Below the pieces are notes generated by a model. The model did not search any database. It had not been told where the DNA came from and saw only the letters and a list, made by a program, of their open reading frames with translations. A stretch of DNA of 64,000 nucleotides from Magallana gigas. Its lineage: Eukaryota. Made by a program: the position numbers and the translations under genes. The stretch lies in NCBI RefSeq assembly GCF_963853765.1, contig NC_088857.1:54064001-54128000 (forward strand). The letters run 5' to 3'. Each line of letters begins with the position of its first letter. Position 1 is the stretch's first letter. Shown piece by piece: positions 21,906 through 53,144 of this stretch.

Positions 21906-22761
21906 TTAGGGTCCAAATCGTCCGCCATTTTGATTACCGAACTGATCTATGTCACCAAGACCTCCAATGAAACCACCCTGTCCAAATCGCCCGCCGAACT
22001 GTTGATCTGTGAACAGTCCTCCGTTAATTTGAGAATCGATTCCACCAGGAACTAAAGGAATGTCTGAGCCAAACCTTCCTCTAGGTCCAAAAAGTCCCCT
22101 GGGTCTGAGACCATCGCCCCAGACTCCTCCACCCCCGGGGGTCAATGGTCCACCTCCTACACAGATGTCCATGTCACAGTCTGGACATTGGATTCCATTG
22201 TATGTGAAGAACTGTGTTCTTCTGCATTCTTGTGGGATGAACTGTTGTGTCTGTAGGCAGTGTCTGGGGGGACACACTACCGGCTTTTCTAGAAGCAGTC
22301 CTTTTCCTCCCGGATATACATTGTCTGTCTTGATAATTGGCTTTTTCAGTCCTTTCTTTGATCCACCAATGAATCCCCTGTTATGAAATCCGTCCAAAAA
22401 TCCTGACTTCTTTTTACCTATGATTCCACCGCCAAGCTTAGGCCCGTACACAATTTCTTTCTTTATCGGAATTCTTTTCTCGCCGTATCGCCTACCTAAA
22501 TGGTCAAAAGACGAATCATTACAGAATATTTATGAAAGATTATTGTCAAAACGGTTCATAGTCTCATACAATACCTTGCTCATTACATTTTTTCAGAAAT
22601 AGAACTTTCAAACAGTCAATGAGTATACCACCAAAACCAATACTTTGCAAACATAGCACAACTTTATTAGAGACTTTGCCTCATTTAAGCATGAACATTA
22701 ACATACCTTCAGTGGCAGCAATGGCGATGATTAGAGCAGCAGCTAGGAGAAAACACTTCAT
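21906..22761 (-). CDS. Secreted Gly/Lys/Arg/Phe-rich protein with 6-Cys domain, copy 1 (214 aa)
   Basis: Exon 1 at 22707-22761 encodes signal peptide MKCFLLAAALIIAIAATE with a phase-1 GTATG donor. Exon 2 at 21906-22495 encodes GRRYGEKRIPIKKEIV...CPPRHCLQTQQFIPQECRRTQFFTYNGIQCPDCDMDIC...GGRFGP*. Confidence 0.85.
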
Positions 22762-22809
22762 AGTGGACAGGTAGTGTAGTGGTGTGAAGAATCCTAGTCG
22801 GACTCCATG

Positions 22810-22964
22810 TATAAATACACAATCCATGTGACGTAATCATTTCAGAAATCAAATGCATGGTCATTTCTATTGGTTCAAATCCTTATACGTAAATAGAACG
22901 ACTCTTCCATATCAATACAGGTTTATTGCCTGAAGGTGCATGCACGGTAGCCGTTGTGACGTCA
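22810..22964 (-). promoter_or_regulatory. Proximal promoter of copy 1 (TATA-like TATTTATA, TGACGTAA, full CRE TGACGTCA); repeated before all six minus-strand copies
   Basis: TATAAATA at 22810-22817 (+ strand), TGACGTAA at 22829-22836 and TGACGTCA at 22957-22964. The same order is kept before the divergent copies 5 and 6. Confidence 0.55.
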
Positions 22965-23347
22965 ACTGTTGACAGTTAAGGGGGATTTCCCTATCTTAAG
23001 ATAGTGTTCGTCTTGTGAGCAAAAACTGCAACGAAGGAAGTTTTACTATAGTAATGTGTACTTTTTGGCAGTGCTTTGAAGTTTTTTGATAAATTAATCA
23101 TTAAACAAATTGAGACAAAGTTCACTGCGCATTGATTATTAAATTTGCGTAAAAAATAATTGTTTAAACGTTCAACACACGCTCAGTGATTATCATATCA
23201 ACAAAATTATTGATATCGAGATGAGTTAAGATTTTACCTTGAGATATAATTTGCAAAATAAAGCACCTTCAACCATCAATTTTCAACTGAAACAGCCATA
23301 TGAAATATCGTAAAATTTACAAACAAGTGAAAAGCTGTCAATGTGAC

Positions 23348-23669
23348 AACAAACCGGGTTTTCTTTTATGTAAACTGTATCCATAATCTATGTCAACCCT
23401 GAATTGATAAACACTACCTACCGTATCCAGTGAAATGTAGTTCCCTATATGAAATATTTGGCAAAAAATTGACTAAGTTCAAAAGCTGGGTTTTTTTAAA
23501 GAATAAATTATCAAAAATCAAAATCCTAGCAATATGCACACCTCTGATATATGTACAATTGATCTGCAAAAGAACAACTTCCTATCTTAAAAACTGTAGG
23601 AGGAGTTATCTGTGCCATTTTCACCATTTTAATAACCGGATTTTTCCGTTAGAAAAACCCGGTTAAAAA
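23348..23669. mobile_element. Helentron/HINE-like non-autonomous element (also at ~29304-29663, ~36160-36519, ~44554-44908)
   Basis: Subterminal inverted repeat AACCGGGTTTTCT / AGAAAAACCCGGTT, a 3' short stem-loop region, a (GCCC)n microsatellite in the unit 2-4 copies, and one core monomer. The architecture matches oyster HINE-type elements; family assignment is inference. Confidence 0.5.
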
Positions 23670-24654
23670 TGAAGAAAATATACAATGTGTGGTTTTATAT
23701 ACAGTAGCATTGGTGATAATTTTCATGATATTTTGGAATGTCCGTATTTTGCTAACAAAAAAGTCTTTGAACAAGAAATACAGTGAACTTTAAATAAGCT
23801 GATCAATTATATAAATATATAATGTAGAAAAACTCAATTTAAAACTGATATAGAAGTTATAAGGAGGTTTTCTCTTCCTCGAACCTTTACAATATACTTT
23901 TATAATGAACTTGTGATACTTGCCTGTTTGTTGTTTATTTACAGATATATTTTAATATGTACCTTCATATATCAGTGGCCTGGTTTTGATTGAATAAAAA
24001 TAAAGATGCATTTCCGTCGGTGGTAACCCAATAACTCAGTTCTTATATATACATGTACATCTATTTATGTTTAATGACGTTAAGATAGTTGGGTCAGTGT
24101 ATTTATAGGTAACAAGGACATGGTGTCTCGGTCAGTGACGTAATGACCTTAGTTACAATGTAAGAGTAGTATTGTCATATTGGTGACAGCTCAGACACTG
24201 GTAATAATGATACGACAGGTAACTGTTCCAATATGCTTTAGAATCAATTACACCAAAGCTGATTGGTGCGGTTGTATTAATATTTCATGGAACATGTAAA
24301 AAAAAAAAAAAAAAAAAACCTTTTACTTCCCATATGTTATAAAATATTTTTTCTCGATATTTGAATAAAAGAAACATAATTATACGAAACACGATTTACT
24401 TAACTGAGAAGAGTACATGAATATTTAGAAAAAAAACGTGTTATTTAGTCCTTTATGATAATTTGTTCTAATAAGCCATTAATGTATATAAAAAATGCTG
24501 GATTTGCCGTAAGAAAATTACATGTATTTCCAAAAATGCTTTAGATAATGAAAATAAAATGTTATTGTCTCATAACTGCAACAGCGCGTGGATACAAATT
24601 GAATAATAGCGCCTTATGAAAATTTGTTTGCACACACCGTTGCATTTATGAGAC

Positions 24655-24748
24655 TCTTTGTGGTCCGAATGACCCCTTAGGTCCCAGACTTCTCCACCCC
24701 GGGGGTCAATGGTCCCCCTCCCACACATAGGTTAATGTCACAGTCCGG
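24655..24748 (-). pseudogene. Truncated relic of the Cys-domain gene family (unit 1)
   Basis: Minus strand reads PDCDINLCVGGGPLTPG then frameshifts. About 875 bp present in unit 2 (30648-31522) are missing here. Confidence 0.75.
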
Positions 24749-25289
24749 TCTCCTTTACGATACCCTATACCCTACCGTAGAAAAGCGGTTTAACAATTAA
24801 TTGAATCCTAATTTGTGTAAATTTATATCTTATTTTTAGTATGTACCTCTCTCTGATCCCACTCTCCCAATATATCGTTTGACAGTTTGGTTCATATATA
24901 ATATATACCGATACTTAAGGTGTATGAAAAGAGTTTTAAATTGTCACCCTCTTCAAGAACGTCAGCGCTTTTTTAAAGATGATAATTCCAGGATTTCAGT
25001 CAAATAAAAAACTTTTGACTAAAAGTATATTATTCGGCGTGTTTGAAAAAAGTTTCCATTTATAACAGTTAACAAACTTATTTTGCTTTTTTACGATGTT
25101 GTAAAGCATATAATTACATGTAAAAAGTGTAATAAAATCATGAAATGGTTATTCAAACCAAATCAGCTAAACAAAAAGAAATTAAAAGGTATAAATATTG
25201 GAGAAGAATTGAAATTGTGAATGAATCCATGACTTCGTCCTCAAGTTTAGACATTTAGGAAATGTAAAGATCATCGGATATAATAAACA

Positions 25290-25510
25290 AAATCAAAAAC
25301 AAATATTAATCCAATCATATTTTATTACAAATAGGAATTCACATACATTAGTATAAACTTTATAAAACAACAAAAATATCACTGTTTGTAAAGTTACATA
25401 AATACAATATTTCCAGGAAATCTCCAAATTTCCAACATTCCAGTGTTCTGAAGGGGGGGGGGGGTTCAAAGTTTCTTTAACTCTTAGCATTTGGTCTAAA
25501 TCGTCCGAAT
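25290..25510 (-). pseudogene. 3'-end relic of a family gene at the duplication junction (also ~32160-32370, ~40380-40600)
   Basis: Matches the 3' flank of copy 5 (47150-47330) and the copy-6 tail (WNVGNLEISW versus WNTGNVGDFGNSW), and ends at GGTCTAAATCGTCCG. Confidence 0.65.
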
Positions 25511-27588: not shown

Positions 27589-27865
27589 ATTGTGAAAGAG
27601 TCCATAATTTAGTCTTCAAGATTGGTTGTAAAGCTCAACGGTTATAACTTTTACATTTCATAATGCAAAACAAATATTATTTCAAATATTTTTTATTACA
27701 AATAGGATTTCATATATAAGTATTATCCTTATAACAGACATACAGAAATATCACAGTAAAATTTTGGCAAATGAGACCGCCCTCCTAGGAGTACAGAAAA
27801 GTCAGACAATGAATTATCCAACATTGTGCTGTTCCGAGAGGGGTGAAAGTTCTACCATCAGTTAA

Positions 27866-28716
27866 TTAGGGTCCAAATCGTCCGCCATTTTGAATACCGA
27901 ACTGATCTATGTCACCAAGACCTCCAATGAAACCACCCTGTCCAAATCGCCCGCCGAACTGTTGATTTGTGAACAGTCCTCCGTTAATTTGAGAATCGAT
28001 TCCACCAGGAACTAAAGGAATGTCTGAGCCAAATCTTCCTCTAGGTCCGAAAGGTCCCCTTGGTCCGAGGTCATCGCCCCAGACTCCTCCACCCCCGGGG
28101 GTCAATGGTCCACCTCCTACACAGATGTCGATGACACAGTCTGGACATTGGATTCCATTGTATGTGAAGAACTGTGGTCTTCTGCATTCTTGTGGGATGA
28201 AATGTTGTGTCTGTAGGCAGTGTCTTGGAGGACACATTACCGTCTTTTCTGGAAGCAGTTCTTTTCCTCCCGGATATACATTGTCTGTCTTGATAATTGG
28301 CTTTTTTAGTCCTTTCTTTGATCCACCAATGAATCCCCTGTTATGAAATCCGTCCAAAAATCCTGATTTCTTTTTACCTATGATTCCACCGCCAAGCTTA
28401 AGCCCGTACACAATTTCTTTCTTTATCGGAATTCTTTTCTCGCCGTATCGCCTACCTAAATGGTCAAAAGACGAATCATTACAGAATATTTATGAAAGAT
28501 TATTGTCAAAACGGTCCACAGTCTCATACAATACCTTTCTCATTACATTTTTTCAGAAATAGAACTTTCAAACAGTCAATGAGTACACGACCAATACTTT
28601 GCAAATATAGTACAACTTTATTAGAGACTTTGCCTCATTTAAGCATGACTATGAACCATACCTTCCGTGGCAGCAATGGCGATGGTTAGAGCAGCAGCTA
28701 GGAGAAAACACTTCAT
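27866..28716 (-). CDS. Secreted Gly/Lys-rich 6-Cys-domain protein, copy 2 (214 aa)
   Basis: Exon 1 at 28662-28716 (MKCFLLAAALTIAIAATE) and exon 2 at 27866-28455; intact frame and splice sites. Confidence 0.85.
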
Positions 28717-31329
28717 AGTGGACAGGTAGTGTAGTGGTGTGAAGAATCCTAGTCGGACTCCATGTATAAATACACAATCCATGTGACGTAATCATTTCAG
28801 AAATCAAATGCATGGTAATTTCTACTGGTTCAAATCCTTATACGTAAATAGAACGACTCTTCCATATCAATACAGGTTTATTGCCTGAAACGTGCATGCA
28901 CGGTAGCCGTTGTGACGTCAGCTGTTGACAGTTAAGGAGGAATTCCCTATCTTAAGATAGTGTTCGTCTTGTGAGCAAAAACTGCAACGAAGGAAGTTTT
29001 ACTATAGTAATGTGTACTTTTTGGCAGTGCTTTGAAGTTTTTTGATAAATTAATCATAAAACAAATTGAGACAAAGTTCACTGCGCATTGATTATTAAAT
29101 TTGCGTAAAAAATAATTGTTTAAACGTTCAACACACGCTCAGTGATCATCATATCAACAAAATTATTGATATCGAGATGAGTTAAGATTTTACCTTGAGA
29201 TATAATTTACAAAATAAAGCACCTTCAACAATCAATTTTCAACTGAAACAGCCATATGAAATATCGTAAAATTTACAAACAAGTGAAAAGCTGTCAATGT
29301 GACAACAAATCGGGTTTTCTTTTATGTAAATTGTATCCATAATCTATGTCAACCCTGAATTGATAAACACTACCTACCGTATCCAGTGAAATGTAGTTCC
29401 CTATATGAAATATTTGGCAAAAATTTGACTAAGTTCAAAAGCTGGGTTTTTTTAAAAAATAAATTATCAAAAATCAAAATCCTAGCAATATGCACACCTC
29501 TGATATATGTACAATTGATCTGCAAAAGAACAACTTCCTATCTTAAAAACTGTAGGAGGAGTTATCTGTGCAATAAGGGTACCCTTTTGGCAGCCGCCTG
29601 CCCGCCCGCCATTTTCACCATTTTAATAACCGGATTTTTCCGTTAGAAAAACCCGGTTAAAAATGAAGAAAATATACAATGTGTGGTTTTATATACATAT
29701 GTACAGTAGCATTGGTGATTATTTTCATAATATTTTGGAATGTCCGTATTTTGCTAACAAAAAAGTCTTTGTACAAGAAATACAGTGAACTTTAAATAAG
29801 CTGATCAAGTAGATAAATATATAATGTAGAAAAACTCAATTTAAAACTGAATAGAAGTTATAAGGAGGTTTTCTCTTCCTCGAACCTTTACAATATACTT
29901 TTATAATAAACTTGTAATACTTGCCTGTTTGTTGTTTATTTACAGATATATTTTAATATGTACCTTCATATATCAGTGGCCTGGTTTTGATTGAATAAAA
30001 ATAAAGATGCATTTCCGTCAGTGGTAACCCAATAACTCAGTTCTTATATATACATGTACATCTATTTATGTTTAAAGACGTTAAGATAGTTGGGTCAGTG
30101 TATTTATAGGTAACAAGGACATGGTGTCTCGGTCAGTGACGTAATGACCTTAGTTACAATGTAAGAGTAGTATTGTCATATTGGTGACAGCTCAGACACT
30201 GGTAATAATGATACGACAGGTAACTGTTCCAATATGCTTTAGAATCAATTACACCAAAGCTGATTGGTGCGGTTGTATTAATATTTCATGGAACATGTAA
30301 AAAAAAAAACAACCTTTTACTTCCCATATGTTATAAAATATTTTTTCTCGATATTTGAATAAAAGAAACATAATTATATGAAACACGATTTACTTAACTG
30401 AGAAGAGTACATGAATATTTAGAAAAAAACGTGTTATTTAGTCCTTTATGATAATTTGTTCTAATAAGCCATTAATGTATATAAAAAATGCTGGATTTGC
30501 CGTAAGAAAATTACATGTATTTCCAAAAATGCTTTAGATAATGAAAAAAAAATGTTATTGTCTCATAACTGCAACAGCGCGTGGATACAAATTGAATAAT
30601 AGCGCCTTATGAAAATTTGTTTGCACACACCGTTGCATTTATGAGACCCATCTTTCAAATAATAATTGTTCATTGCTTTTATTTAAGGTTTTAAAAATTT
30701 ATTCACTTTCCGCAGTTATGACTAATTTTTAAAATTCTCTGCCTTATTCAACGAGTAATACGCAATTAACGAAAGAGCCACTGGAAGAACCCAATTATGC
30801 CGACAAAAGTAGTGCACAACGCTTTAAATTCTCATAACACAATTCTATTTCCCATTCTGTAATTTGATGAATTTGCTTTTGGTATACAAAAAAGTTAGAT
30901 ATTTAGATTCATTTAACTGTTGAAAAATATTATATCGAATCGGTATATGTATAAGTTAGTCATGTTCTTCGAGAAATATTGAAGGAAGATTGAATGCATT
31001 TATACGCACCAGATTTGGTGATTGGGTCTTATAAGTTATGCGTTAATATCACTCAAATGAATGCAATTTAATAGGGGAAAAGAAAGAGATTGTAAATATT
31101 CATTTTTAAAATGTTTTCAATCAGCTATCGTTCACTAACCATTCATTTTCACTAAAGTTTAAAATCTATTAAAGTATATTTGTATATCTCTCCTGGTGTT
31201 CAAAGAGGGAGTTTGCATTGTGTTAGGAGAAACAAAGGGAAGTGTGTTATCAGTGTTTCTCAAGACCCCCATCATATCCGGTGTCTGGTGTTTCAGGAGA
31301 GGTAAATTTCATAAACATGTTGAATTATG

Positions 31330-31616
31330 GCTCAAATTGTTTCCATTTTAAATACCGAATTGATTGAAGCCACTCATATCTCCATTGATACCACACTGAC
31401 CGAATCGCGCGCGCAGTTATAGATCAGGAACCAACCCTCCGTTTTCCTGGAATCGATTCCGTTTGGGAACAAAATAAACATCTGAACCAAACCTTCCTTT
31501 TCAATCCAGACCCCAGGATGGTTCTTTGTAGTCCGAATGACCCCTTAGGTCCCAGACTTCTCCACCCCGGGGGTCAATGGTCCCCCTCCCATACATAGGT
31601 TAATGTCACAGTCCGG
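31330..31616 (-). pseudogene. Degenerate relic of a copy-6-type gene, 3' half (unit 2; also ~39550-39838 and ~46300-46600)
   Basis: Minus strand aligns to PDCDIDICVGGGPLTPG...GTIPG...GRFGSD...NGG...RFGQ...NGD...FNQFGI with frameshifts and stops. There is no exon 1, and it begins mid Cys domain. Confidence 0.75.
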
Positions 31617-34600
31617 TCTCCTTTTCGATACCCTATACCCTACCGTAGAAAAGCGGTTTAACAATTAATTGAATCCTAATTTGTGTAAATTTATATCTTA
31701 TTTTTAGTATGTACCTCTTTCTGATCCCACTCTCCCAATATATCGTTTGACAGTTTGGTTCATATATAATATATACCGATACTTAAGGTGTATGAAAAGA
31801 GTTTTAAAATGTCACCCTCTTCAAGAACGTCAGCGCTTTTTTAAAGATGATAATTCCAGGATTTCAGTCAAATAAAAAACTTTTGACTAAAAGTATATTA
31901 TTCGGCGTATTTGAAAAATGTTTCCATTTATAACAATTAACAAACTTATTTTGCTTTTTTACGATGTTGTAAAGCATATAATTACATGTAAAAAGTGTAA
32001 TAAAATCATGAAATGGTTATTAAAACCAAATCAGCTAAACAAAAAGAAATTAAAAGGTATAAATATTGGAGAAGAATTGAAATTGTGAATGAATCCATGA
32101 ATTCGTCCTCAAGTTTAGACATTTAGGAAATAAATTTAGGATATAATAAACAAAATCAAAAACAAATATTAATCCAATCATATTTTATTACAAATAGGAA
32201 TTCACTTACATTAGTATAAACTTTATAAAACAACAAAAATATCACTGTTTGTAAAGTTACATAAATACAATATTTCCAGGAAATCTCCAAATCTCCAACA
32301 TTCCAGCGTTCTGAAGGGGGGGGGGGGGTCAAAGTTTCTTTAACTCTTAACATTTGGTCTAAATCGTCCGAATCTTAATCGTCCCATTTGTCTTTCTACA
32401 GCGCTTTTTATGTTTAATGGGTACCGAAATCTTTCTTAAATGATAGGGGAAATCATGATTTGTAAGCTTTTGTAACACTTTTTAACTATTACACCCAAGG
32501 ATAGAAAAGATATGATTTTATCTAAAGAGGTGAGATTGGAAGAGGGCTAGTTGTATGACTTATATACCGTGTACGGCAAATACTGATGCATTGATAACCA
32601 CGACTGACACCTCTTTTGATTAACTAAGGTCCGGAATTGTGCAAACATCGGGAAGATTAAATGTACCAAAAAGAACGGACAAAAACACTGGAGTTATCTT
32701 AAATCAGCTTTTTTAACATCTCGCGTGATTTCCAATTCAGTTGTCTCTCTTTGCACTGCACATTTTGCTAACAGAGAGTGCAGAACATCAATAATATGGA
32801 TTTAGGGGTTTTTTAACTAACACTTTTTAATAATGGACGAACTTCCAATAACCACAACCTGCCAAATTCAGTTTCAGATTTTTAAGTTTTAATTAGTCTA
32901 CCTTTGTGGTAAAATTTCTATATCAGTATTTTGTTTATCACACCCAATGTTCTTTTAACTGTGCATTTTTTGTTCTAAGGTCATTTTAAAAGTAGTTAAT
33001 TGCTTTGTAAAACCAAACGTCTTAAAGTAAATAAACAAAAATTATGAAAGTACCATATTAATTACTGCTATAATTTCGAAAGCAAAGAATAAACCCTGTA
33101 CCTAACGTTCTTGTAGAAAGACTGGAATTTTTTTCCTATTCTGAAGTAACATTCTCACTAACTGTTATGGTGACACCACCTTTAAACTATTTACACTCTT
33201 ACTTTTTCATCTATTCAGTCAATGTTCTACAAATAGTATTGCCGGCATTGAACATTGTTAAACAAAGCCGACAACACACCAATAGTAGGATGGATAAGAA
33301 AGTGAAAATCGAGATTATCGATAACTATATCTGTATCAACAATTATATCTATAACATTAATTCTAATTTCAACATTTCCAACTCTTGAGATAACCAATAT
33401 TTTACACGGCATAATGGTCAATATTTAAAATATGCCAATATTGACATGTACATGGGTGTCATAATAATCTGGAATGGCGTCCTCCATTAAAACACTTGTG
33501 CTGGTTGTTTTATAAAGGGGATATTTGTAGGTATGGGTCCAATTGACAATTACGATAATAAATAATATTTTTTCAACCTGTTTTAAACAGCCCAACTGAA
33601 AATACATTGTAGTTGGCAAATATAGTTTCACTATATCGTGTGATCAAAAACATTAAATCTTTCTCTATTAAGTATCAATAAATCAACATCTGTTTACACT
33701 GATTAAGATTTTTAAAGAAGATGGGTGAACAAGCTTAAGGCGTGTAAAATGCAATTTTTTCAATAATAATTAAAAACAGTGTATATTTAATGTAACATCG
33801 GTTTGTAACCCTTAAATATTTTAATTACATTTAATAGGTTGATTTAAACTGGCGTGTACGTGTCAAAATCTCCAAATAGTGTTATTTTTATAACTTCAAT
33901 GCCGTTTCTTTTATAGAATGGGTCGGAGCTCCATATGTTTGGCATAGTCTAAATGCGGTTTGATGGAATTTAAACAGATTTCCATCAACAAAAAATGTGG
34001 AGAGATGACACACTATAGTTTTAAAATGTCATTTTGTAGCCTAACAATTGAACGTTTTGGTGAAATAACCAAAGTCCGTAAATCCGTAGCCAATGTCTCA
34101 TATACCATTTAAACAACGCACTTTGTTGTGTATGAAATGGCTCAGTGGTTAGAGCACCAGACAAAATAAAAGATAAAAAAAGAGCACCAGACATTAGGTA
34201 AAATAGAACTTGGGTTTTTAGGTTGTGGGTTCGATACCACCAAAACGTAAGGATTTATTTTATTTTTCTTATCTTTTTTTTTAAATATTTCAAAGTGAAT
34301 ATATTAAAAAAATTACCCTTTTGTAAACTTATATTATAACATTTCAAATATATTTAAATGAAAAAAATGTTAAATTTTAAATTGTATTTTACGACTAAAC
34401 CAAATGGGCAATTGCGCCATCTTATTCCCCCATATTCTTATTGTGAAAGAGTCCATAATTTAGTCTTCAAGATTGGTTGTAAAGCTCAACGGTTATAACT
34501 TTTACATTTCATAATGCAAAACAAATATTATTTCAAATATTTTTTATTACAAATAGGATTTCATATATAAGTATTATCCTTATAACAGACATACAGAAAT

Positions 34601-34716: not shown

Positions 34717-35572
34717 TTAGGGTCCAAATCGTCCGCCATTTTGAATACCGAACTGATCTATGTCACCAAGACCTCCAATGAAACCACCCTGTCCAAATCG
34801 CCCGCCGAACTGTTGATCTGTGAACAGTCCTCCGTTAATTTGAGAATCGATTCCACCAGGAACTAAAGGAATGTCTGAGCCAAATCTTCCTCTAGGTCCG
34901 AAAGGTCCTCTTGATCCGAGGTCATCGCCCCAGACTCCTCCACCCCCGGGGGTCAATGGTCCACCTCCTACACAGATGTCGATGACACAGTCTGGACATT
35001 GGATTCCATTGTATGTGAAGAACTGTGGTCTTCTGCATTCTTGTGGGATGAAATATTGTGTCTGTAGGCAGTGTCTTGGAGGACACATTACCGTCTTTTC
35101 TGAAAGCAGTCCTTTTCCTCCCGGATATACATTGTCTGTCTTGATAAATGGCTTTTTTAGTCCTTTCTTTGATCCACCAATGAATCCCCTGTTATGAAAT
35201 CCGTCCAAAAATCCTGACTTCTTTTTACCTATGATTTCACCGCCCAGGTTAGGTCCGTACACAATTTCTTTCTTTATCGGAATTCTTTTCTCGCCGTATC
35301 GCCTACCTAAATGGTCAAATGACGAATCATTACAGAATATTTATGAAAGATTATTGTCAAAACGGTTCATAGTCTCATACGATACCTTGCTCTTTACATT
35401 TTTTCAGAAATAGAACTTTCAAACAGTCAATGAGTACACCACCAAAACCAATACTTTGCAAACATAGCACAACTTTATTAGAGACTTTGCCTCATTTAAG
35501 CATGAATATTAACATACCTTCAGTGGCAGCAATGGCGATGATTAGAGCAGCAGCTAGGAGAAAACACTTCAT
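34717..35572 (-). CDS. Secreted Gly/Lys-rich 6-Cys-domain protein, copy 3 (214 aa)
   Basis: Exon 1 at 35518-35572 and exon 2 at 34717-35306; intact. Confidence 0.85.
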
Positions 35573-38599: not shown

Positions 38600-41077
38600 T
38601 TAACTGAGAAGAGTACATGAATATTTGGAAGAAAAAAAAACCGTGTTATTTAGTCCTTTATGATAATTTGTTCTAATAAGCCATTTATGTATATAAAAAA
38701 TGCTGGATTTGCCGTAAGAAAATTACATGTATTTCCAAAAATGCTTTAGATAATGAAAATAAAATATTATTGTCTCATAACTGCAACAGCGCGTGGATAC
38801 AAATTGAATAATAGCGCCTTATGAAAATTTGTTTGCACACACCGTTGCATTTATGAGACCCATCTTTCAAATAATAATTGTTCATTGCTTTTATTTTAGG
38901 TTTTTAAAATTTATTCACTTTCCGCAGTTATGGCTAATTTTTAAAATCTCTGCCTTATTCAACGAGTAACACGCAATTAACGAAAGAGCCACTGGAAGAG
39001 CCGAATTATGCTGACAAAAGTAGTACACAACGCTTTAAATTCTCATAACACAATTCTATTTCCCATTCTGTAATTTGATAAATTTGCTTTTGGTATACAA
39101 AAAAGTTAGATATTTAGATTCATTTAACTGTTGAAAAATATTATATCGATGAAATATTAATCAGTATATGTATAAGTTAGTCATGTTCTTCGAGAAATAT
39201 TGAAGGAAGATTGAATGCATTTATACGCACCAGATTTGGTGATTGGGTCTTATAAGTTATGCGTTAATATCACTCAAATGAATGCAATTTAATAGGGGAA
39301 AAGAAAGAGATTGTAAATATTCATTTTTAAAATGTTTTCAATCAGCTATCGTTCACTAACCATTCATTTTCACTAAATTTTAAAATCTAATAAAGTATAT
39401 TTGTATATCTCTCCTGGTGTTCAAAACGGGAGTTTGCATTGTGTTAGGAGAAACAAAGGGAAGTGTGTTATCAGTGTTTCTCAAGACCCCCATCATATCC
39501 GGTTTCTGGTGTTTCAGGAGAGGTAAATTTCATAAAAATGTTGAATTATGGCTCAAATTGTTTCCATTTTAAATACCGAATTGATTGAAGCCATTCATAT
39601 CTCCATTGATACCACACTGACCGAATCGCGCGCGCAGTTATAGATCAGGAACCAACCCTCCGTTTTCCTGGAATCGATTCCATTTGGGAACAAAATAAAC
39701 ATCTGAACCAAACCTTCCTTTTCAATCCAGACCCCAGGATGGTTCTTTGTGGTCCGAATGACCCCTTAGGTCCCAGACTTCTCCACCCCGGGGGGTCATT
39801 AGTCCACCTCCCACACATAGGCCAATGTGATAGTCCGGTCTCCTTTACGATACCCTATACCCTACCGTAGAAAAGCGGTTTAACAATTAATTGAATCCTA
39901 ATTTGTGTAAATTTATATCTTATTTTTAGTATGTACCTCTCTCTGATCCCACTCTCCCAATATATCGTTTGACAGTTTGGTTCATATATAATATATACCG
40001 ATACTTAAGGTGTATGAAAAGAGTTTTAAATTGTCACCCTCTTCAAGAACGTCAGCGCTTTTTTAAAGATGATAATTCCAGGATTTCAGTCAAATAAAAA
40101 ACTTTTGACTAAAAGTATATTATTCGGCGTGTTTGAAAAATGTTTCCATTGATAACAGTTAACAAACTTATTTTGCTTTTTTACGATGTTGTAAAGCAAA
40201 TAATTACATGTAAAAAGTGTAATAAAATCATGAAATGGTTATTAAAACCAAATCAGCTAAACAAAAAGAAATTAAAAGGTATAAATATTGGAGAAGAATT
40301 GAAATTGTGAATGAATCCATGACTTCGTCCTCAAGTTTAGACATTTAGGAAATGTAAAGCTCATCGGATATAATAAACAAAATCAAAAACAAATATAAAT
40401 CCAATTATATTTTATTACAAATAGGAATTCACATACATTAGTATAAACTTTATAAAACAACAAAAATATCACTGTTTGTAAAGTTACATAAATACAATAT
40501 TTCCAGGAAATCTCCAAATCTCCAACATTCCAGTGTTCTGAAAGGGGGGGGGGGGGGTTCAAAGTTTCTTTAACTCTTAACATTTGGTCTAAATCGTCCG
40601 AATCTTATCCGTCCCATTTGTCCTTCTACAGCGCTTTTTATGTTTAATGGGTACCGAAATCTTTCTTAAATGATAGGGGAAATCATGATTTGTAAGCTTT
40701 TGTAACACTTTTTAACTATTACACCCAAGGATAGGAAAGATATGATTTTATCTAAAGAGGTGAGATTGGAAGAGGGCTAGTTGTATGACTTATATACCGT
40801 GTACGGCAAATACTGATGCATTGATAACCACGACTGACACCTCTTTTGATTAACTAAGGTCCGGAATTGTGCAAACATCGGGAAGATTAAATGTACCAAA
40901 AAGATACAATCCAACAGAACGGACAAAAACACTGGAGTTATCTTAAATCAGCTTTTTTAACATCTCGCGTGATTTCCAATTCAGTTGTCTCTCTTTGCAC
41001 TGCACATTTTGCTAACAGAGAGTGCAGAACATCAATAATATGGATTTAGGGTTTTTTTAACTAACACTTTTTAATAA

Positions 41078-43110: not shown

Positions 43111-43966
43111 TTAGGGTCCAAATCGTCCGCCATTTTGAATACCGAACTGATCTATGTCACCAAGACCTCCAATGAAACCACCCTGTCCAAATCGCCCGCC
43201 GAACTGTTGATCTGTGAACAGTCCTCCGTTAATTTGAGAATCGATTCCACCAGGAAACAAAGGAATGTCTGAGCCAAATCTTCCTCTAGGTCCAAAAGGT
43301 CCCCTTGGTCCGAGGTCATCGCCCCAGACTCCTCCACCCCCGGGGGTTAATGGTCCACCTCCTACACAGATGTCGATGACACAGTCTGGACATTGGATTC
43401 CATTGTATGTGAAGAACTGTGGTCTTCTGCATTCTTGTGGGATGAAATGTTGTGTTTGTAGGCAGTGTCTTGGAGGACACATTACCGGCTTTTCTGGAAG
43501 CAGTCCTTTTCCTCCCGGATATACATTGTCTGTCTTGATAATTGGCTTTTTCAGTCCTTTCTTTGATCCACCAATGAATCCCCTGTTATGAAATCCGTCC
43601 AAAAATCCTGACTTCTTTTTACCTATGATTCCACCGCCAAGCTTAGGCCCATACACAATTTCTTTCTTTATCGGAATTCTTTTCTTGCCGTATCGCCTAC
43701 CTAAATGGTCAAAAGACGAATCATTACAGAATATTTATGAAAAATTATTGTCAAAACGGTTCATAGATTCATACAATACCTTGCTCATTACATTTTTTCA
43801 GAAATAGAACTTTCAAACAGTCAATGAGTACACCACCAAAACCAATACTTTGCAAACATAGCACAACTTTATTAGAGACTTTGCCTCATTTAAGCATGAA
43901 TATTAACATACCTTCCGTGGCAGCAATGGCGATGATTAGAGCAGCAGCTAGGAGAAAACACTTCAT
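43111..43966 (-). CDS. Secreted Gly/Lys-rich 6-Cys-domain protein, copy 4 (214 aa)
   Basis: Exon 1 at 43912-43966 and exon 2 at 43111-43700; intact. Confidence 0.85.
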
Positions 43967-46900
43967 AGTGGACAGGTAGTGTAGTGGTGTGAAGAATCCT
44001 AGTCGGACTCCATGTATAAATACACAATCCATGTGACGTAATCATTTCAGAAATCAAATGCATGGTCATATCTACTGGTTCAAATCCTTATACGTAAATA
44101 GAACGACTCTTCCATATCAATACAGGTTTATTGCCTGAAACGTCCATGCACGGTAGCCATTGTGACGTCAACTGTTGACAGTTAAAGGGGATTTCCCTAT
44201 CTTAAGATAGTGTTCGTCTTGTGAGCAAAAACTGCAACGAAGGAAGTATTACTATAGTAATGTATACTTTTTGGCAGTGCTTTGAAGTTTTTTTAATGAA
44301 TTAATCATAAAACAAATTGAGACAAGGTTCACTGCGCATTGATTATTAAATTTGCGTAAAAAATAATTGTTTAAACGTTCAACACACGCTCAGTGATCAT
44401 CATATCAACAAAATTATTGATATCGAGATGAGTTAAGATTTACCTTGAGATATAATTTACAAAACAAAGAACCTTCAACCATCAATTTTCAACTGAAACA
44501 GTCATATGAAAACTCGTAAAATTTATAAACAAGTGAAAAGCTGTCAATGTGACAGCAAACCGGGTTTTCTTTTTATGTGAACTGTATCCATAATCCAAGT
44601 CAACCCTGATTTGAAAAACACTACCTAACGTATCCAGTGAAATGAAGTACCCTATATGCAATATTTGGCCAAAAAATGACTAAGTTGAAAAGCTGGTTTT
44701 AAAAAAAAATATCAGAAATCAAAATCCTAGCAATATACACACCTCTGATATATGTACAATTGATCTGCAAAAGAACAACTTCCTATCTTAAAAACTGTAG
44801 GAGGAGTTATCCGTACAATGAGGGTACCCTTGTGGCAGCCGCTTGCCCGCCCGCCATTTTCACCATTTTAATAACCGGATTTTTCCGTTAGAAAAACCCG
44901 GTTAAAAATGAAGAAAATACACAATGTGTGATTTTATATACAGTAGCATTGGTGTTGAATTTCATAATATTTTGGAATGTCTGTATTTTGCTAACAAAAA
45001 AGATTTTTGTACAAGAAATACCGTGAACTTTAAATAGGCTGATCAAGTAGATAAATATATAATGTAAAAAAAACCTCAAATTAAAACTGATATAGAAGTT
45101 ATAAGGAGGTTTTCTCTTCCTCGAACCTTTACAATATACTTTTATAATGAACTTGTGATTCTTGCCTTTTTGTTGTTTATTTACAGATGTATTTTAATAT
45201 GTACTTTTATATATCAGTGGCGTGGTTTTGAGTAAATAAAAATAAAAATTGGTAACCCAATAACTCAGTTTTTATATAAACATGTACATCTATTTATGTT
45301 CAATGCCGTTAAGATACTTGGGACAGTGTATTCAATAGGTAACAAGGACATGGTGTCTCGGTCAGTGACGTAATGACATGAGTTACAATGAAAGAGTAGT
45401 AGTGTCATACTGCTGACAGCTCAGACACTGGTAATAATGATACGACAGGTAACTGTTACAATATGCTTTAGAATCAATTACACCAAAGCTGATTGGTGCG
45501 GTTGTATTAATATTTCATGGAACATGTAAAACAATGCTTTTATTTCCCATATGTAATGACATATTTTTTCTTGATATTTGAATAAAAGAAACATATTAGA
45601 AACACGTTTTTACAATACAGCTTTACTGAGAAGAACACATGAATATTTACAGAAAAAAAAGTGTGATTTAGTCCTTCCGCAATTATGACTAATTTTCAAA
45701 AATCTCTGCATTACTCAATGAGTAATGTGCAATTAACGGAAGAGTCATTGGAAGAGCCGAATTATGCTGACAAAAGTAGTGCACAACACTTTAAATTCTA
45801 ATAACACAATTCTATTTCCCATTATGTAATTTGATGAATTTGCTTTTGTTATACGAAAAAAATAGTAAATTCAATTCATTTAATGTTGAAAAATATTAAC
45901 ATCAATGAAATATTAATCAGTATATGTATAAGTCAGGCATGTTCTTCGAGAAATACTGAAGGAAGATTGAATGTATTTATACGCACCAGATTTGGTGATT
46001 GGGTCTTATAAGTTATACGTTAATATCACTCAAATGAATGCAATTTAATAGAGGAAAAGAAAGAGATTGTAAATATTCTTTTTTAAAATGTTTTTAATCA
46101 GCTATCGGTCACTGTAACCATTCATTTTCACTCAAGTTTAAAATCCAATAAAACATACATGTAAATCTCTCCTGGTGTTCAAAGAGGGAGTTTGCATTGT
46201 GTTAGGAGAAACAAGGGAAGTGTGTTATCAGTGTTTCTCAAGACCCCCATCATATCCGGTGTTTCAGGAGAGGTAAATATTATAAAATTGTTGAATTATG
46301 GCTCAAATTGTTTCCATTTTAAATACCGAATAGATCGAAGCCACCCATATCTCCATTGATACCACACTGACCGAATCGCGCGCGCAATTATAGATCAGGA
46401 ACCAACCCTCCGTTTTCCTGGAATAGATTCCGTTGGGAACTAAATGAACATCTAAACCAAACCTTCCTTTTCAATTCAGACCCCCCCCCCCCCCCCCCGG
46501 GATGGTTCTTCGTGGTCCGAATGAACCCTTGGTTCCAGACTTCTCCACCCCCAGGGGTCAATGGTCCACCTCCCACACATAGGTCAATGTCATAGTCCGG
46601 TCTCCTTTACGATAACCTATACTGTACCGTAGAAAAGCGGTTTTACAATTAATTGAATCCTAATTTGTGTAAATTTATATCTTATTTTTAGTATGTACCT
46701 CTCTATGATCCCACTCTCCCAATATATCGTTTGACAGTTTGGTTCATATATAATATATACCGATACCTAAGGTGTATGAAAAGAGTTTTAAATTGTCACC
46801 CTCTTCAAGAATGTCAGCACTTTTTTTTAAGATGATATTTCAAGAATTTCAGTCAATTAAAAAACTTTTGACTAAAAGTATATTATTCGGCGTGTTTGAA

Positions 46901-47299: not shown

Positions 47300-47895
47300 C
47301 TATGGTCCAAATCGTCCGCCATTTTGAAGACCAAACTGATCGAAGCTACCCAGACCTCCACTGAAATCATTCTGACCGAACCGCCCACCAAACTGTGGAT
47401 CCGGGAACAGCCCTCCGTTGATCTGAGTGTTAATTCCACCAGGAACTAATGGAATGTTTGAGCCAAATCTTCCTCCGGGCCCAAAACGTCCCCTGGGTCC
47501 GAGTCCTTTATTTGATCCACCAATGAATCTCCTGTTTTGAAATCCGTCTAAGAATCCTGATTTCTTTTTACCTATGATTCCACTGCCAAGCTTAGGTCTA
47601 TATACGATTTCTTTCTTTATTGGAATTCTTTTCTCGCCGTATCGTCTGCCTGGAAGGTCGAAAGAGCAGAACTTATAGAAAGTTTGTTGAAGGCAAATAA
47701 TCATACATATAGATCAACGACAACATTTTAAGAGTATCATACCACAATATTCTTACTAGCATTACATTTTTCATCAATTGCGCTTTTTTGTACCTTGATT
47801 TTGTAAATTCAGTAATATGAACCATGACAATGAACCGTACCTTCAGTGGCAGCAATGGCGATTATTAGAGCAGCGGCTAGGAGAAAACACTTCAT
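47300..47895 (-). CDS. Family copy 5 lacking the Cys domain (134 aa)
   Basis: Exon 1 at 47841-47895 (same signal peptide, GTACG donor) and exon 2 at 47300-47649. GGSNKGL joins directly to GPRGRFG, an 80-codon in-frame deletion relative to copies 1-4. Confidence 0.75.
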
Positions 47896-48643
47896 AGTGG
47901 ACAGCTTGTGTGATGGTCTGAGGAATCTAAGTCTGACCCCATGTATAAATACACAGTCGACATGACGTAATCATTTCAGAAATTAAATGTACGGCAATTC
48001 TGTTGGTTAAAATCTTCCTACGTAAAATTAACTATTTCCATCTCAGAATAGTTCATGACCTGAAACGTGCATGCACGGTAGCCGCCGTGACGTCAACTAT
48101 TGACATTTTGAGGATTTTTTATAATTTTGTGTGTTATGTTAAGCAAAGCTAAGGAGCATTTCATTTATAAAACAAGACAAAGATTATTGTAACATGAGAC
48201 CGAAATGACTGGATCCTTAATATATATCGATATAATTAATGGTTAATTTAACTTGTGTTGCGGGTTTAGTTAATGCTCAGGGGGTTTTTTTCCATGTCAA
48301 CAACATTACCTTTTATTTAGTTGTGATTTTTAATTTTGATATTGGAAATAATTTCAAAAAGTAAAAAGAATGCTTTCTTTTGATAAAAGTAAAAAGAATG
48401 CTTTCTTTTACAAAATATCTTTTTATATTTTTATTAATGACGTTAAGACAATGTGGGTCATCGTATTCAGTGGTGACCAGCCAAGGACAAGGTGTTTCGG
48501 TCAGTGACTTTATGACCATTGTCGCGATAAATGTGTAAATGTTGTAACATCCAATGCCTAAGAAATATTTAACTGACAATGCTAAATGACAACGTTAAAA
48601 ATTAATTTTTGGAACAAAGTTATAATTCAACTATTCGCACACT

Positions 48644-49260
48644 GTTTGTAATTTCAAAGGAATACTCTCTATAGAAATACTCGGTTTATAATTTTATAGG
48701 AATACTCTGTTTAAAAAGACTCGGTTTAAAATTTTAAAGGAATACTCTCTTTCAAAAGAATCGGTTTATAATTTTAAAGGAATACTCTCTTTAGAAAGGC
48801 ACGGTTAATAATTTTAAAGGAATACTCTCTTTAGAATACTCTCTTTAGAGAGACACGGTTTATAATTTCAAAGGAATACTCTCTTTAGAAAGACACGGTT
48901 TATAATTTTAAAGGAATACTCTCTTTAAAAAGACTCGGTTTATAATTTTAAAGGAATAATCTCTTTAGAAAGACACGGTTTATAATTTTATAGGAATACT
49001 CTCTTTAAAAAGACTCCGTTTAAAATTTAAAAGGAATACTCTCTTTCAAAAGACTCGGTTTATAATTTTAAAGGAATACTCTCTTTAGAAAGACACGGTT
49101 TATAATTTCAAAGGAATACTCTCTTTAGAATACTCTCTTTAGAGAGACACGGTTTATAATTTCAAAGGAATAATCTCTTTAAAAAGACTCGGTTTAAAAT
49201 TTTAAAGGAATACTCTCTTTAGAAAGACTCGGTTTATAATTTTAAAGGAATACTCTCTAT
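48644..49260. repeat. 40-bp minisatellite, ~15 copies
   Basis: Unit AAGGAATACTCTCTTTAGAAAGACTCGGTTTATAATTTTA; two units carry an internal GAATACTCTCTTTA duplication; no unique spacers. Confidence 0.92.
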
Positions 49261-50779
49261 TGAATCGTTTGCTGGTCTCCTGTATTGTGTTGTTTATTGG
49301 TCAACAGCTGAACAGCTCATAGACATATACAAGACAATTGAGATACACATGATAAATAAATATACATATAAACGGATCTTTGTATCGGTATCGCTGAATT
49401 TGGCGATTACTGGTCTGGGTGCGCCCCTACCCCCTACCCTACCTGGAATTAGATGGAGGGCTTAAATATCGGCTGTTGATAGGTCGACGATCACCATCTC
49501 TTTTGTGATGCGGCACAGTATTAAAACTCTCATTACAATATTTCCTCAGAGCATTCATACATTGTAATGACAATTGTTTTTGAGTAACATGAAATTTGCC
49601 ATTGTAATTCAACAGAAGTCTGAGATAATAAAAACTGTTCCCTACTTGAGTCTGTTCGCATTTATAAAACCATACATCGTCTTTTCGTAAAATTACCAAA
49701 TTTCTGCAAACCATTATTTTTGTTTTCTTTACATTAACCGTTAACGACTATTTCTCTGTATAATTTTCTAATGCATTCAACATTGACTTTAAGTCATAAA
49801 CAGACAAAGAATGAATAACCATGTCGTTTGCGTAAAAATAAGGAGAGCTCTTATAATTCAATTGGTGAATCGCCATTACTGAAAAATTCCATTTCACAAA
49901 CATTGTCACAGAGAGAAAAAAAGAAATTCGTCATTCGAGCATTACACGTATCAGTTTTATCATTATTGGTACAGTACGTGGTGAGTTATAGAAGGATTTT
50001 TGATGTAACAATTTTATTGCTGTTAGATATTACGCATTGAGTAATTTTTATTTACAAACACCAGGTACATGTATATCATAGTTTAATTTGGGGTATTCCA
50101 AATCATCTTTTATAACTTGGTTGCAAAAAAGTAAAACACAAGTTATAGGGAACAGATCTTTGTCATAAAATATTTCTATCTTTGAAGGAGGGATTCCTAT
50201 GACACCATCATTTTAATGTATAGCGGGTCTCTTCCGGGTATTTGAACCATTAGCTGACTTAAAATATTCCGACAAAATAATAATTTAACGAATTAGTTCA
50301 TCTTTTGTTTATTTTCATTAAAATCAGTTTTTAGTGGTAAAAAAAATATTAAATTGTTTCGTTGTTAGTATCAATATGATTTGTATTGTATACATATTTC
50401 TATTGTTGTTTATCAACCAGTATACATGTAGTTTATATATCAAATGTCAAAAAAAGTTAAATATAAATCAAAACTCATCCGTTGACTTAAAAGCAGTTAA
50501 CAAAAAATGTTACAGTAGATTTTCATCAATGAACTGAACTGAATCGGCGTTCCAAATAGCATCCCATCTTTTTGTTTTATAACCAACGTGTTGTTATATT
50601 AAAAACAATACCTACGCTTTATGTAACGTTTATGTTATATTGATGTATACACTATAATGTCATACACTATAAGATCACAAATTTAAAGCAGTAATTAGAT
50701 CATCAATATTTTATTATAAAGGGATTTCATGTGCATTTTATACAAACAAGCAAATATAAATATCACAGGTTTCAATAAG

Positions 50780-51789
50780 TTAGACAAAACTAGACCGCCT
50801 GTTTAGACGTAGAGTATTGTCATTCCAAGAATTCCCGAAATCCCCAACATTTCCTGTGTTCCAAGAGGGGTCAAAGTCTCCGAAACCTGTATTGAGACGA
50901 TTAACAAGTCCATTTCTACCATTGTTAAATGAGGGTCCGAACTGTCCGCCATTTTGAATACCGAACTGATCGAATCCGCCCAAATCTCCATTTAAACCTC
51001 CCTGACCAAACCGCCCACCCTGACCGAACCGCCCACCGAACTGTTGATCTGGGAACAGTCCTCCGTTGATCTGAGAATCAATTCCACCGGGAACCAAAGG
51101 AATATCTGAACCAAATCTTCCCTGCCAGCCGAGATCTCCAGGGATGGTTCCTCTGGGTCCGAAAGGTCCCCTGGGTCTGAGACCATCGCCCCAGACTCCT
51201 CCACCCCCGGGGGTTAATGGTCCACCTCCCACACAGATGTCGATGTCACAGTCCGGGCATTGGATTCCATTGTGTGTGAAGAACTGTGGTCTTCTGCATT
51301 CTTGTGGAATGAATTGTTGTGTCTGTAGGCAGTGTCTGGGGGGACACATTACCGGCTTCTCCGGAAGCAGGCCTTTTTCTCCTGGTATTATTTTGCTTTC
51401 TTTGATAATTGGCTTTTCAAGTCCTTTCTTTGATCCGCCAAGGAATCCTCTTTCACGAAATCCGTCCAAAAAACCTGACTTCTTTTTTGTTATGATTCCA
51501 CCGCCAATCTTAGGCCCGTGAACGATTTCTTTCTTTATAGGAATTCTTTTCTCGCCGTATCGCCTACCTAAAAAGTTGAAGGGGAAAAATAATGGAGAAT
51601 GTATCGAATGCAAACCTGAATGCACATCAGTCAATATGCACAATTACGAAAACGAGCACTTGGCTAATATCGCACAACGTCTTGATTCTTTAATGCTTTG
51701 ACTTTGGTATAAGCAGCATGACTATGTAACATACCTTCAGTGGCAGCAATGGCGATGATTAGAGAGGCAGCTAAGAGAAAACACTTCAT
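50780..51789 (-). CDS. Family copy 6, long form with 50-aa C-terminal tail (280 aa)
   Basis: Exon 1 at 51735-51789 (MKCFLLAASLIIAIAATE) and exon 2 at 50780-51567. Same 6-Cys domain, with an extra GTIPGDLGWQ segment, an extra GGRFGQ repeat and the tail SFNNGR...RRSSFV. Confidence 0.87.
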
Positions 51790-52579
51790 AGTGGACAGCT
51801 GGTGTACTGGTGTGAAGAATCCTAGTCGGACTCCATGTATAAATACACAATCAATGTGACGTAATCAGTGCAGGAATTAAATGCATGGTCATTTCTATTG
51901 GCTGAATATTTTTCGACGTCAAATAGAGCGAAGTCTTCTTTCTCGAAATAGGTTAATGGCCTGCACGGTAGCCACTGTGACGTCAGCAGTTGACAGTTTT
52001 GTGGAAATCCCAAACGTTAATAGTCTCTGTGCTGACCACAACCTGCAAAGCAGAAACAATAGTTTGGACATGTTCTAGATGTTGATCAAAGTTTTAGATC
52101 ATTGGTGATTAGAAGACCAACAGTGTGATACAATACTTTGTGTTGGTCACTGGGACCGGGCATTCAACTTTTATAAACAAATAATTCATTAATCACGTGT
52201 TTCAAGATCAGCGCATGCTCTGAATTTGTCTTGTTAAAAACTTTATTTTTACTTATTTAGGTGTGTTTATTTTTGCTATAAATTTGAAAGATTTTTCCTA
52301 ATATGCAATATTGAACATCTTTTTAACGTTCGGACAATTGGAAACTATATTCAATAATTGCAAGCGAAGGACGAATTGTCTCGGTCTGTGACTTTACGAC
52401 CTTGGTCTGCAGGAAATTAATTTGTCTTGTGACGTCACGTTGGCCATCATTTCTATTTATGACATTTTTTATTTTTGGCTGCGGTGTCAATGTTTTTTCA
52501 GTAATACGTAGGATAACATAAAACGTGTTGAGTTGTCCCGTATTTTTATTTCCTGCTGCATAGAATAGATCTATTGACT

Positions 52580-53144
52580 ATGAATTACGGAGTTATTTTG
52601 ATTGTCTTGACTTTAGTGTCCACAAATTTAGTACATGGTAAGTAAACGAGGTTTTTTTGGAACATGTGTTATTGTTTTATTCATTTGATCAATATTCTTC
52701 GTTACAGCAGCAACATTACATTGTTGTTTTTCACATTTAAAAAAAAAAGTTATTGGTTTTTTTAAAAATTCGAAAAATGCTACTCTTATTTGCACAAAAA
52801 CCTTCTTTTAAACTATATGAAAAGCGTAAATTTATGATTCAGTCAATCAAATTCTGATCCTTTACGCGGTGACATTTCTAGGTCAGAGTTACCGACCCAA
52901 TGGTTACGCTGGGAGTAACTACGCCGGGGGCAGACCCAGTGGGCGCTACACTCAGGGCGGCAGGTGCCCGGCCCAGGCCTGCACCCTCCAACTGATCCCC
53001 CCGGAGTGTCGCCAGAGGCAGTTCTTTGCTTATAACGGCAGGATGTGTCCCGGATGTGACGTCGATATCTGTACCGGAGTCAACACCGGAGTGGGCGCCC
53101 AATTCAACAACTTTCCCTCAAACTCTCTACCGCTCGGATTCTAA
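52580..53144 (+). CDS. Divergent secreted paralogue with the same 6-Cys domain (106 aa)
   Basis: Exon 1 at 52580-52637 (MNYGVILIVLTLVSTNLVH, phase-1 GTAAGT donor). Exon 2 at 52882-53144 encodes GQSYRPNGYAGSNYAGGRPSGRYTQGGR-CPAQACTLQLIPPECRQRQFFAYNGRMCPGCDVDIC-TG... Confidence 0.82.

What the first reader, a model, noticed from the sequence alone, without database searches (positions are those of the whole stretch)
21906..53144. Expanding cluster of secreted cationic Gly/Arg/Phe-rich proteins built around an unassigned 6-Cys domain
Seen: seven intact two-exon genes (signal-peptide exon plus phase-1 intron) and at least seven relics. Six genes share C-x4-C-x9/10-C-x12-C-x2-C-x4-C with IPxECR and QFFxxNGxxCPxCxxDIC. 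In the minus-strand copies it is flanked by a Lys-rich N-terminus and GRFG/GGF low-complexity repeats. I cannot match the domain to a named family; the spacing only loosely recalls antistasin. The locus shows modular variants (domainless, long-tailed, short Tyr/Gly form), shared promoter blocks and recent amplification. Inference: a co-regulated extracellular material or defence system (shell matrix, cement or adhesive, or antimicrobial), with Arg/Phe-Gly sticker-spacer regions suited to coacervation and a disulfide module for cross-linking or binding.
Basis: partly seen in the sequence, partly recalled or inferred. Interest (0 to 1): 0.85.

Follow-up and report, generated by a model that had tools for sequence, protein, structure and literature searches.

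The report
Oyster secreted six-cysteine gene cluster
Seven neighbouring Pacific-oyster genes encode small secreted, mostly floppy proteins; six carry an unnamed six-cysteine mini-domain found only in bivalves, whose loop recalls protease inhibitors. They probably help build or protect a shell-type extracellular matrix, but their tissue and function are untested.

Summary
Observation confirmed with small corrections. The window is Magallana gigas (GCA_963853765.1). Seven two-exon secreted genes are intact; spliced transcripts exist for two gene types. True spacing is C-x4-C-x8/10-C-x12-C-x2-C-x4-C. Only the N-block is cationic; the GRFG tail is net neutral and Tyr-free. The seven relics are passenger copies of two fragments.

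The domain has no Pfam, PDB or fold match. It is bivalve-wide, as single copies with low-complexity tails, 2-3-domain proteins and 10-16-repeat proteins. In most relatives the loop after Cys2 (P/T-L/R/M/K-I/M/E-L/Y/F-I-P) recalls Kazal-type reactive loops. The expanded oyster copies have a two-residue insertion there and an almost invariant loop.

The F+G head-to-head pair is ancestral in oysters; copies A-E were seen only in Magallana. dN/dS is below 1 throughout, every gene has an upstream CRE, and no amphipathic helix was found.

Best reading (about 0.5): matrix proteins amplified for dosage, carrying an inhibitor-derived module. Tissue is unknown and no shell-proteome hit was found. The scan may have met this domain before on this chromosome (s1-382410, not checkable); similar clusters are common in this genome.

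The parts
22707..22761 (-). Gene A exon 1 (signal peptide, phase-1 donor)
   Evidence: spliced contig L018 98%
21906..22495 (-). Gene A exon 2: Lys-rich block, 6-Cys domain (22161-22274), Gly/Phe/Arg/Asp tail; 214 aa in all
   Evidence: identical to RefSeq model P0015 from its second Met
27866..28716 (-). Gene B (exon 1 28662-28716, exon 2 27866-28455; domain 28121-28234), 214 aa
   Evidence: spliced contig L019 99%
34717..35572 (-). Gene C (exon 1 35518-35572, exon 2 34717-35306; domain 34972-35085), 214 aa
43111..43966 (-). Gene D (exon 1 43912-43966, exon 2 43111-43700; domain 43366-43479), 214 aa
47300..47895 (-). Gene E, domainless internal-deletion form (exon 1 47841-47895, exon 2 47300-47649), 134 aa; intact in M. 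angulata too
50780..51789 (-). Gene F, ancestral long-tailed form (exon 1 51735-51789, exon 2 50780-51567; domain 51233-51346), 280 aa; orthologues in C. virginica and Saccostrea
52580..53144 (+). Gene G, short Tyr/Gly form with family-type x8 loop (exon 1 52580-52637, exon 2 52882-53144; domain 52965-53072), 106 aa, head-to-head with F
   Evidence: spliced contigs L003, L004
51790..52579 (.). F-G divergent intergenic region with full CRE sites at 51978 and 52430; two blocks conserved with C. virginica
22762..22990 (-). Shared promoter block (full CRE about -203, CCAAT -112, half CRE -73, TATA -56), repeated upstream of B, C, D, E, F (CRE at 22957, 28913, 35769, 44163, 48088, 51978)
24683..24748 (-). 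Relic: truncated fragment starting inside the domain
31286..31616 (-). Relic: 3' part of an F-like exon 2 with stops and indels
39507..39838 (-). Relic: copy of the same fragment
46260..46600 (-). Relic: copy of the same fragment
25209..25443 (-). Relic: decayed end of an F-like tail plus 3' flank (limits approximate)
32077..32306 (-). Relic: copy of the decayed tail end (limits approximate)
40299..40547 (-). Relic: copy of the decayed tail end (limits approximate)

Best explanation
A-F are secreted, largely disordered block proteins (Lys-rich basic block, one small disulfide-bonded domain, neutral Gly/Phe/Arg/Asp tail) that act as components of an organic extracellular matrix: shell framework, periostracum or cement. 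Shown: secretion signal, splicing of A/B- and G-type transcripts, order only in the domain, purifying selection, shared CRE promoter, tandem amplification in Magallana. Inferred: the basic block binds acidic matrix partners, the conserved aromatic tail motifs drive self-assembly, and copy gain raises dosage in a stage- or tissue-restricted burst. The domain probably descends from a canonical serine-protease-inhibitor module. It may still inhibit in G, protecting the matrix, and likely serves as a binding or assembly module in A-D/F, whose loop has a two-residue insertion.
For: Only residues about 70-118 of mature A are ordered. The low-complexity tail is conserved in sequence across three oyster genera (dN/dS 0.13-0.15). 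A relative has its linker expanded to about 300 aa of Pro/Gly/Ile/Lys repeats (P0062). A domainless copy (E) is intact in two species with dN/dS about 0.2 against D and F, so the flanks have a function of their own. Copies A-D are near-identical with dN/dS 0.28-0.62, which fits dosage rather than diversification. All real relatives with a known organism are shelled bivalves. No reads fell on the exons in two RNA runs of 1.9 Gb each, so expression is restricted.
Against: The tissue or stage of expression could not be determined (run identities coded or untraceable). No peptide or accession was found in three shell-proteome supplements or one extrapallial-fluid supplement; these are weak negatives because identifiers may differ. 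The tail has no Tyr, unlike shematrin or DOPA-type proteins. Restricted, CRE-driven expression also fits an inducible defence gene.
Confidence: 0.5

Rival explanations
1. The main function is protease inhibition. The domain is a new canonical serine-protease-inhibitor scaffold, and the disordered blocks only tether it in mucus or matrix.
For: In 88 family domains the residues after Cys2 read P43/T18, then L25/R18/M10/K7, then I27/M14/L12/E8, then L17/Y16/F13, then I81, P82. Glu/Gln at the third place occurs in 12 of 23 domains with Thr/Ser first and in 0 of 43 with Pro, though from only about 3-4 lineages. From my own knowledge this mirrors Kazal P2-P4' loops such as ovomucoid third domain. 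Proteins with 10-16 repeats and varied loop residues resemble multi-domain inhibitors. The C1-x4-C2 start, Gly hairpin and C-x2-C end recall antistasin. A cvSI/I84-like gene lies next door.
Against: No Pfam Kazal or antistasin hit for any of 114 domains. A loop-only profile finds no PDB inhibitor at E up to 10. A-D/F have a two-residue loop insertion and a nearly invariant loop across three genera. E lacks the domain yet is kept.
Confidence: 0.22
2. Antimicrobial or defence proteins organised like crustins, penaeidins or hyastatin (cationic or Gly-rich arm plus a cysteine module), induced through CRE elements.
For: Signal peptide, net charge +9 to +13, Gly-rich arm and six cysteines; recent copy gain; dibasic sites in the N-block could release cationic peptides.
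Against: No amphipathic helix above shuffled controls (p 0.90-0.99). No positive selection. The domain is neutral. No reads in two unrelated RNA runs. No AMP family hit.
Confidence: 0.15
3. Secreted proteins of another restricted secretion (egg coat, seminal fluid, larval mucus) or precursors cut at dibasic sites into signalling peptides.
For: Restricted expression, KR/KK/RR sites, CRE-rich promoter.
Against: No repeated amidated peptide cassettes; slow evolution is atypical of gamete-recognition proteins; the linker expands into Pro/Gly repeats in a relative.
Confidence: 0.1
4. The fourfold amplification of A-D is an assembly artefact (uncollapsed haplotypes) and only A, E, F, G are real loci.
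For: Unit divergence of 2-5% is near oyster allelic levels (own knowledge); the M. angulata reference shows one annotated A-type copy.
Against: No gaps in the window; units differ in length and have staggered breakpoints; four distinct proteins; earlier independent M. gigas annotations list at least two A-type loci (K1QMI2, K1PDR3; LOC105336566, LOC117681718).
Confidence: 0.05

Closest known systems
Kazal-type serine protease inhibitors (MEROPS I1; PF00050, PF07648)
   Same: Six cysteines, tandem multi-domain forms, and a loop after Cys2 whose residue preferences match Kazal P2-P4' (comparison from own knowledge; counts).
   Different: Cys2-Cys3 spacing is 8 or 10, not 7; no central helix or GSDGxTY motif; the model is a single beta-hairpin; no HMM or fold match.
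Antistasin-type domain (I15; PF02822)
   Same: C-P-x3-C start, aromatic residue followed by an Asn-Gly hairpin, C-x2-C near the end, six cysteines, tandem repeats; inferred 1-4, 2-5, 3-6 pairing would be the same.
   Different: Spacing is x8/x12/x2/x4-6 instead of about x3/x10/x2/x1; invariant Ile-Pro insert; no Pfam hit in 114 domains.
Low-complexity shell-matrix proteins (shematrins, KRMP, prismalin-type; Lustrin A and perlwapin as inhibitor-domain matrix proteins)
   Same: Signal peptide, basic and Gly-rich blocks, lineage-restricted tandem amplification, pairing of disordered blocks with a small cysteine domain.
   Different: No detected sequence similarity; tail is Phe/Arg/Asp-rich and Tyr-free; presence in shell not shown.
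Crustin type II, penaeidin and hyastatin antimicrobial proteins
   Same: Signal plus cationic or Gly-rich arm plus cysteine module.
   Different: Different cysteine frameworks (WAP, penaeidin); domain central and neutral; no diversifying selection.

Membership tests
Kazal (I1) | Match to Pfam Kazal_1 or Kazal_2 | tested here: not met
   0 of 114 domains at E 0.1 or better
Kazal (I1) | C2-x7-C3 spacing and central alpha-helix | tested here: not met
   x8/x10 spacing; hairpin-only model
Kazal (I1) | Canonical P3-P4' loop sequence pattern | tested here: inconclusive
   Pattern present in x8 members (Kazal pattern from own knowledge); altered in A-D/F; loop profile finds no PDB inhibitor
Antistasin (I15) | Match to PF02822 and its cysteine spacing | tested here: not met
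Antistasin (I15) | Disulfide pairing 1-4, 2-5, 3-6 | not testable with these tools
Canonical protease inhibitors (any) | Tight-binding inhibition of a serine protease | not testable with these tools
   Needs an assay
Shell-matrix proteins | Signal peptide and low-complexity disordered regions | tested here: met
Shell-matrix proteins | Peptides detected in shell extracts | tested here: inconclusive
   No hits in the supplements searched; two key papers had none held
Shell-matrix proteins | Mantle or shell-field expression | tested here: inconclusive
   Spliced transcripts exist but the tissue of the runs is unknown
DOPA-type adhesive proteins (mfp-like) | Tyr-rich cationic repeats | tested here: not met
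   Tyr 0.4-2.6% in A-F, none in the tail
Linear cationic or crustin-like antimicrobial proteins | Amphipathic helix or WAP/penaeidin domain | tested here: not met

The most novel reading that the evidence does not exclude
The domain is an undescribed, bivalve-specific canonical serine-protease-inhibitor scaffold (a Kazal-like loop on an antistasin-like frame), used as arrays of up to 16 heads in clams, and in oysters duplicated, disarmed by a loop insertion and co-opted as the folded hub of a self-assembling shell or cement protein that was then amplified.
Probability: 0.2. Interest if true: 0.65.

Novelty: new variant of a known kind. Interest (0 to 1): 0.42.

Why it matters
It defines an unnamed 36-38-residue disulfide domain spread across all major bivalve groups, small enough for chemical synthesis, with a direct test (protease inhibition by G versus F). 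If the matrix reading holds, the cluster shows how bivalves build shell or cement proteins by joining an inhibitor-derived module to low-complexity blocks and raising copy number. The general kind (secreted low-complexity protein plus small cysteine domain in a tandem cluster) is common in molluscs and recurs many times in this genome, which limits the surprise.

Tried and rejected
Pfam on exons, whole relatives and 114 domains: only scattered zinc-finger-level noise. PDB sequence searches with three profiles: noise or nothing. Foldseek, VIA-align and Atlas shape searches: nothing; this is uninformative for a 40-residue domain. ESM Atlas features: blank. Literature searches by accession, motif and run id found no paper on these genes. 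The pediveliger gene list of PMC6337334 could not be mapped because I lack the CGI ids. HMMER hits P0063, P0064, P0068, P0071-P0074 and P0080 were rejected as repeat-inflated noise. A zinc-finger reading was rejected: the proteins are secreted, with six invariant Cys and no His ligand. The RefSeq 236-aa N-terminal extension is doubtful: its ATG lies upstream of the TATA box and is absent in F and in contig L018. Exons were joined only inside local scripts for translation, composition, dN/dS and BLAST against fetched DNA. Relics were read with their stops and not repaired.
Full report
Source. A locus fetched for a RefSeq protein is 100% identical to the window over 20.9 kb: Magallana gigas assembly GCA_963853765.1, chromosome OY970749.1. 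The window has no N. The genes are already in RefSeq and UniProt as uncharacterised proteins, and no paper on them turned up by accession or motif.

Observation. Seven genes splice cleanly with one phase-1 GT-AG intron after a signal-peptide exon: A, B, C, D (214 aa), E (134 aa, internal deletion removing the domain), F (280 aa) on the minus strand and G (106 aa) on the plus strand, 790 bp from F and head-to-head with it. Six hold the domain; the spacing is C-x4-C-x10-C-x12-C-x2-C-x4-C in A-D/F and x8 in G. A-D sit in units of 6.0, 6.9 and 8.4 kb that are 95-98% identical. Seven relic pieces exist, but they are copies of two decayed parts of an F-like gene that travel with the unit. Charge is blocky: N-block +11 to +15, domain 0 to -1, tail 0 to -2 with no Tyr.

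Expression. Spliced contigs exist for G (SRR24489147, SRR21843891) and for A- and B-like genes (SRR4419965, SRR4419967), and one low-depth exon junction appears in run X1. Two 2026 RNA runs, 1.9 Gb read from each, gave no reads on the E, F or G exons, so expression is restricted. The tissue could not be established.

History. C. virginica has only F and G, head-to-head. Saccostrea echinata has F, G and a separate G-like copy lacking Cys2. M. angulata has E, F, G and one annotated A-type gene, with a 4.1-kb stretch I could not see. The oyster F/A and G domains form one supported clade (97/91; short alignment, rough values). So F and G most likely arose by an oyster duplication, A and E in Magallana (dS to F 0.33-0.52), and A-D very recently (dS 0.03-0.07, below the 0.08-0.13 to M. 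angulata A), or they were homogenised by conversion. dN/dS is 0.28-0.62 among A-D, 0.23 for A versus F and 0.13-0.15 between genera; domain dN is about 0.1 at saturated dS. There is no sign of positive selection, though counts among A-D are small.

Promoter. A full CRE at about -200, a CCAAT, a half CRE at -73 and a TATA at -56 align between the M. gigas copies and C. virginica F. Full CRE sites precede all seven genes and both C. virginica genes; Saccostrea has half sites only. Co-regulation is inferred, not shown.

The domain family. HMMER over 1.84 billion proteins gave 32 hits, 24 of them real on inspection. They are proteins with 10-16 repeats (Mactra, Mercenaria, Mya, Potamilus), small 2-3-domain secreted proteins (Ruditapes, Mercenaria, Potamilus, Mytilus, Mactra) and single domains with Arg/Asn/Asp/Gly/Trp-rich tails (Mytilus, Pecten, C. 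virginica). Every named source is a bivalve; several hits are unnamed. The Mytilus gene has the same plan of signal exon, basic linker, domain and tail. No Pfam family matches any of 114 domains meaningfully. AlphaFold gives a compact model (pLDDT 84) with one beta-hairpin and flanking bridges, and no structural match, which means little at this size. In mature A only the domain is ordered.

The loop. In 88 family domains the residues after Cys2 are mostly Pro/Thr, then Leu/Arg/Met/Lys, then Ile/Met/Leu/Glu, then Leu/Tyr/Phe, then Ile-Pro. Thr goes with Glu/Gln two places on (12/23 against 0/43 for Pro), from only a few lineages. From my own knowledge this is the signature of Kazal reactive loops, and the rest of the frame loosely recalls antistasin; both are canonical protease inhibitors. 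The tools did not confirm the link: a loop-only profile finds nothing in the PDB. G keeps the family-type loop, shared with clam repeats. A-D and F have two extra residues and a loop that is nearly invariant across three genera, which argues against a diversifying inhibitor role in the amplified copies.

Mechanism. Most likely (0.5) these are matrix proteins made in a regulated burst: a basic block for acidic partners, a conserved aromatic tail for self-assembly, and a disulfide module of inhibitor origin. The retention of domainless E, the sequence conservation of the tail and the Pro/Gly repeat expansion in relative P0062 favour a structural role. Rivals are a tethered protease inhibitor (0.22), an antimicrobial protein (0.15; no amphipathic helix), another restricted secretion (0.1) and an assembly artefact for A-D (0.05). 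Which matrix is involved is not shown; searches of four supplements were blank and weak.

Comparison and novelty. The domain is not a member of Kazal or antistasin by the tests run, though it may work like them. The proteins fit the known kind of lineage-restricted secreted low-complexity proteins with a small cysteine domain. The domain family itself seems undescribed. An earlier scan note (s1-382410) describes a roughly 35-residue six-cysteine bivalve domain at 22 or more sites on this chromosome; it may be the same domain, which I could not check. Several other notes list similar clusters in this genome. Verdict: real, new variant of a known kind, interest 0.42.

Procedure. Searches used exon references or stored protein ids; the joined model was not typed into any search tool, and exons were joined only in local scripts. 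Relics were left unrepaired.

Noticed in passing
window 53519-54479 (+): Three-exon, 79-aa secreted gene with two six-cysteine halves, conserved beside G in C. virginica, M. angulata and Saccostrea. Pattern resembles the oyster cvSI/I84 protease inhibitors (own knowledge); last exon gives a weak scorpion-toxin-fold hit, E 0.005. Contig L004 runs from G into this gene with correct splicing, so read-through is possible.
   Followed up: partly
L025 13670-13801 (-), Saccostrea echinata: Independent G-like duplicate whose second cysteine is replaced by Phe; not annotated.
   Followed up: partly
RefSeq models P0013-P0016, P0019: The 236-aa models add 22 residues from an ATG upstream of the TATA box; probably mis-started. 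The M. angulata E orthologue is misnamed 'fibrillarin-like'.
   Followed up: partly
window 11844-12638 and 48639-49265: A 21-bp-period tandem and inverted repeat block, and an approximately 85-bp-period satellite between genes E and F.
   Followed up: no
window 55642-59900 (-): Multi-exon gene of about 390-400 aa ending in a Thr/Ser-rich stalk and a C-terminal hydrophobic segment; syntenic in three oyster genera; no Pfam hit for the last exon.
   Followed up: no
P0055-P0060, P0065, P0069 (Mactra, Mercenaria, Mya, Potamilus and unnamed): Uncharacterised proteins made of 10-16 tandem copies of the domain with varied loop residues; best candidates for a multi-headed inhibitor test.
   Followed up: partly
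P0062 (JGI, 533 aa): F-like protein whose linker has expanded into about 300 aa of Pro/Gly/Ile/Lys/Asp repeats, elastomer-like.
   Followed up: no
L024 655-6395 (M. angulata): A 5.7-kb insertion without counterpart in the M. gigas window interrupts the duplicated unit.
   Followed up: no
L016 2077-2923 and 10001-11088 (Mytilus trossulus): The mussel relative is also a recent tandem pair with the same two-exon plan.
   Followed up: partly
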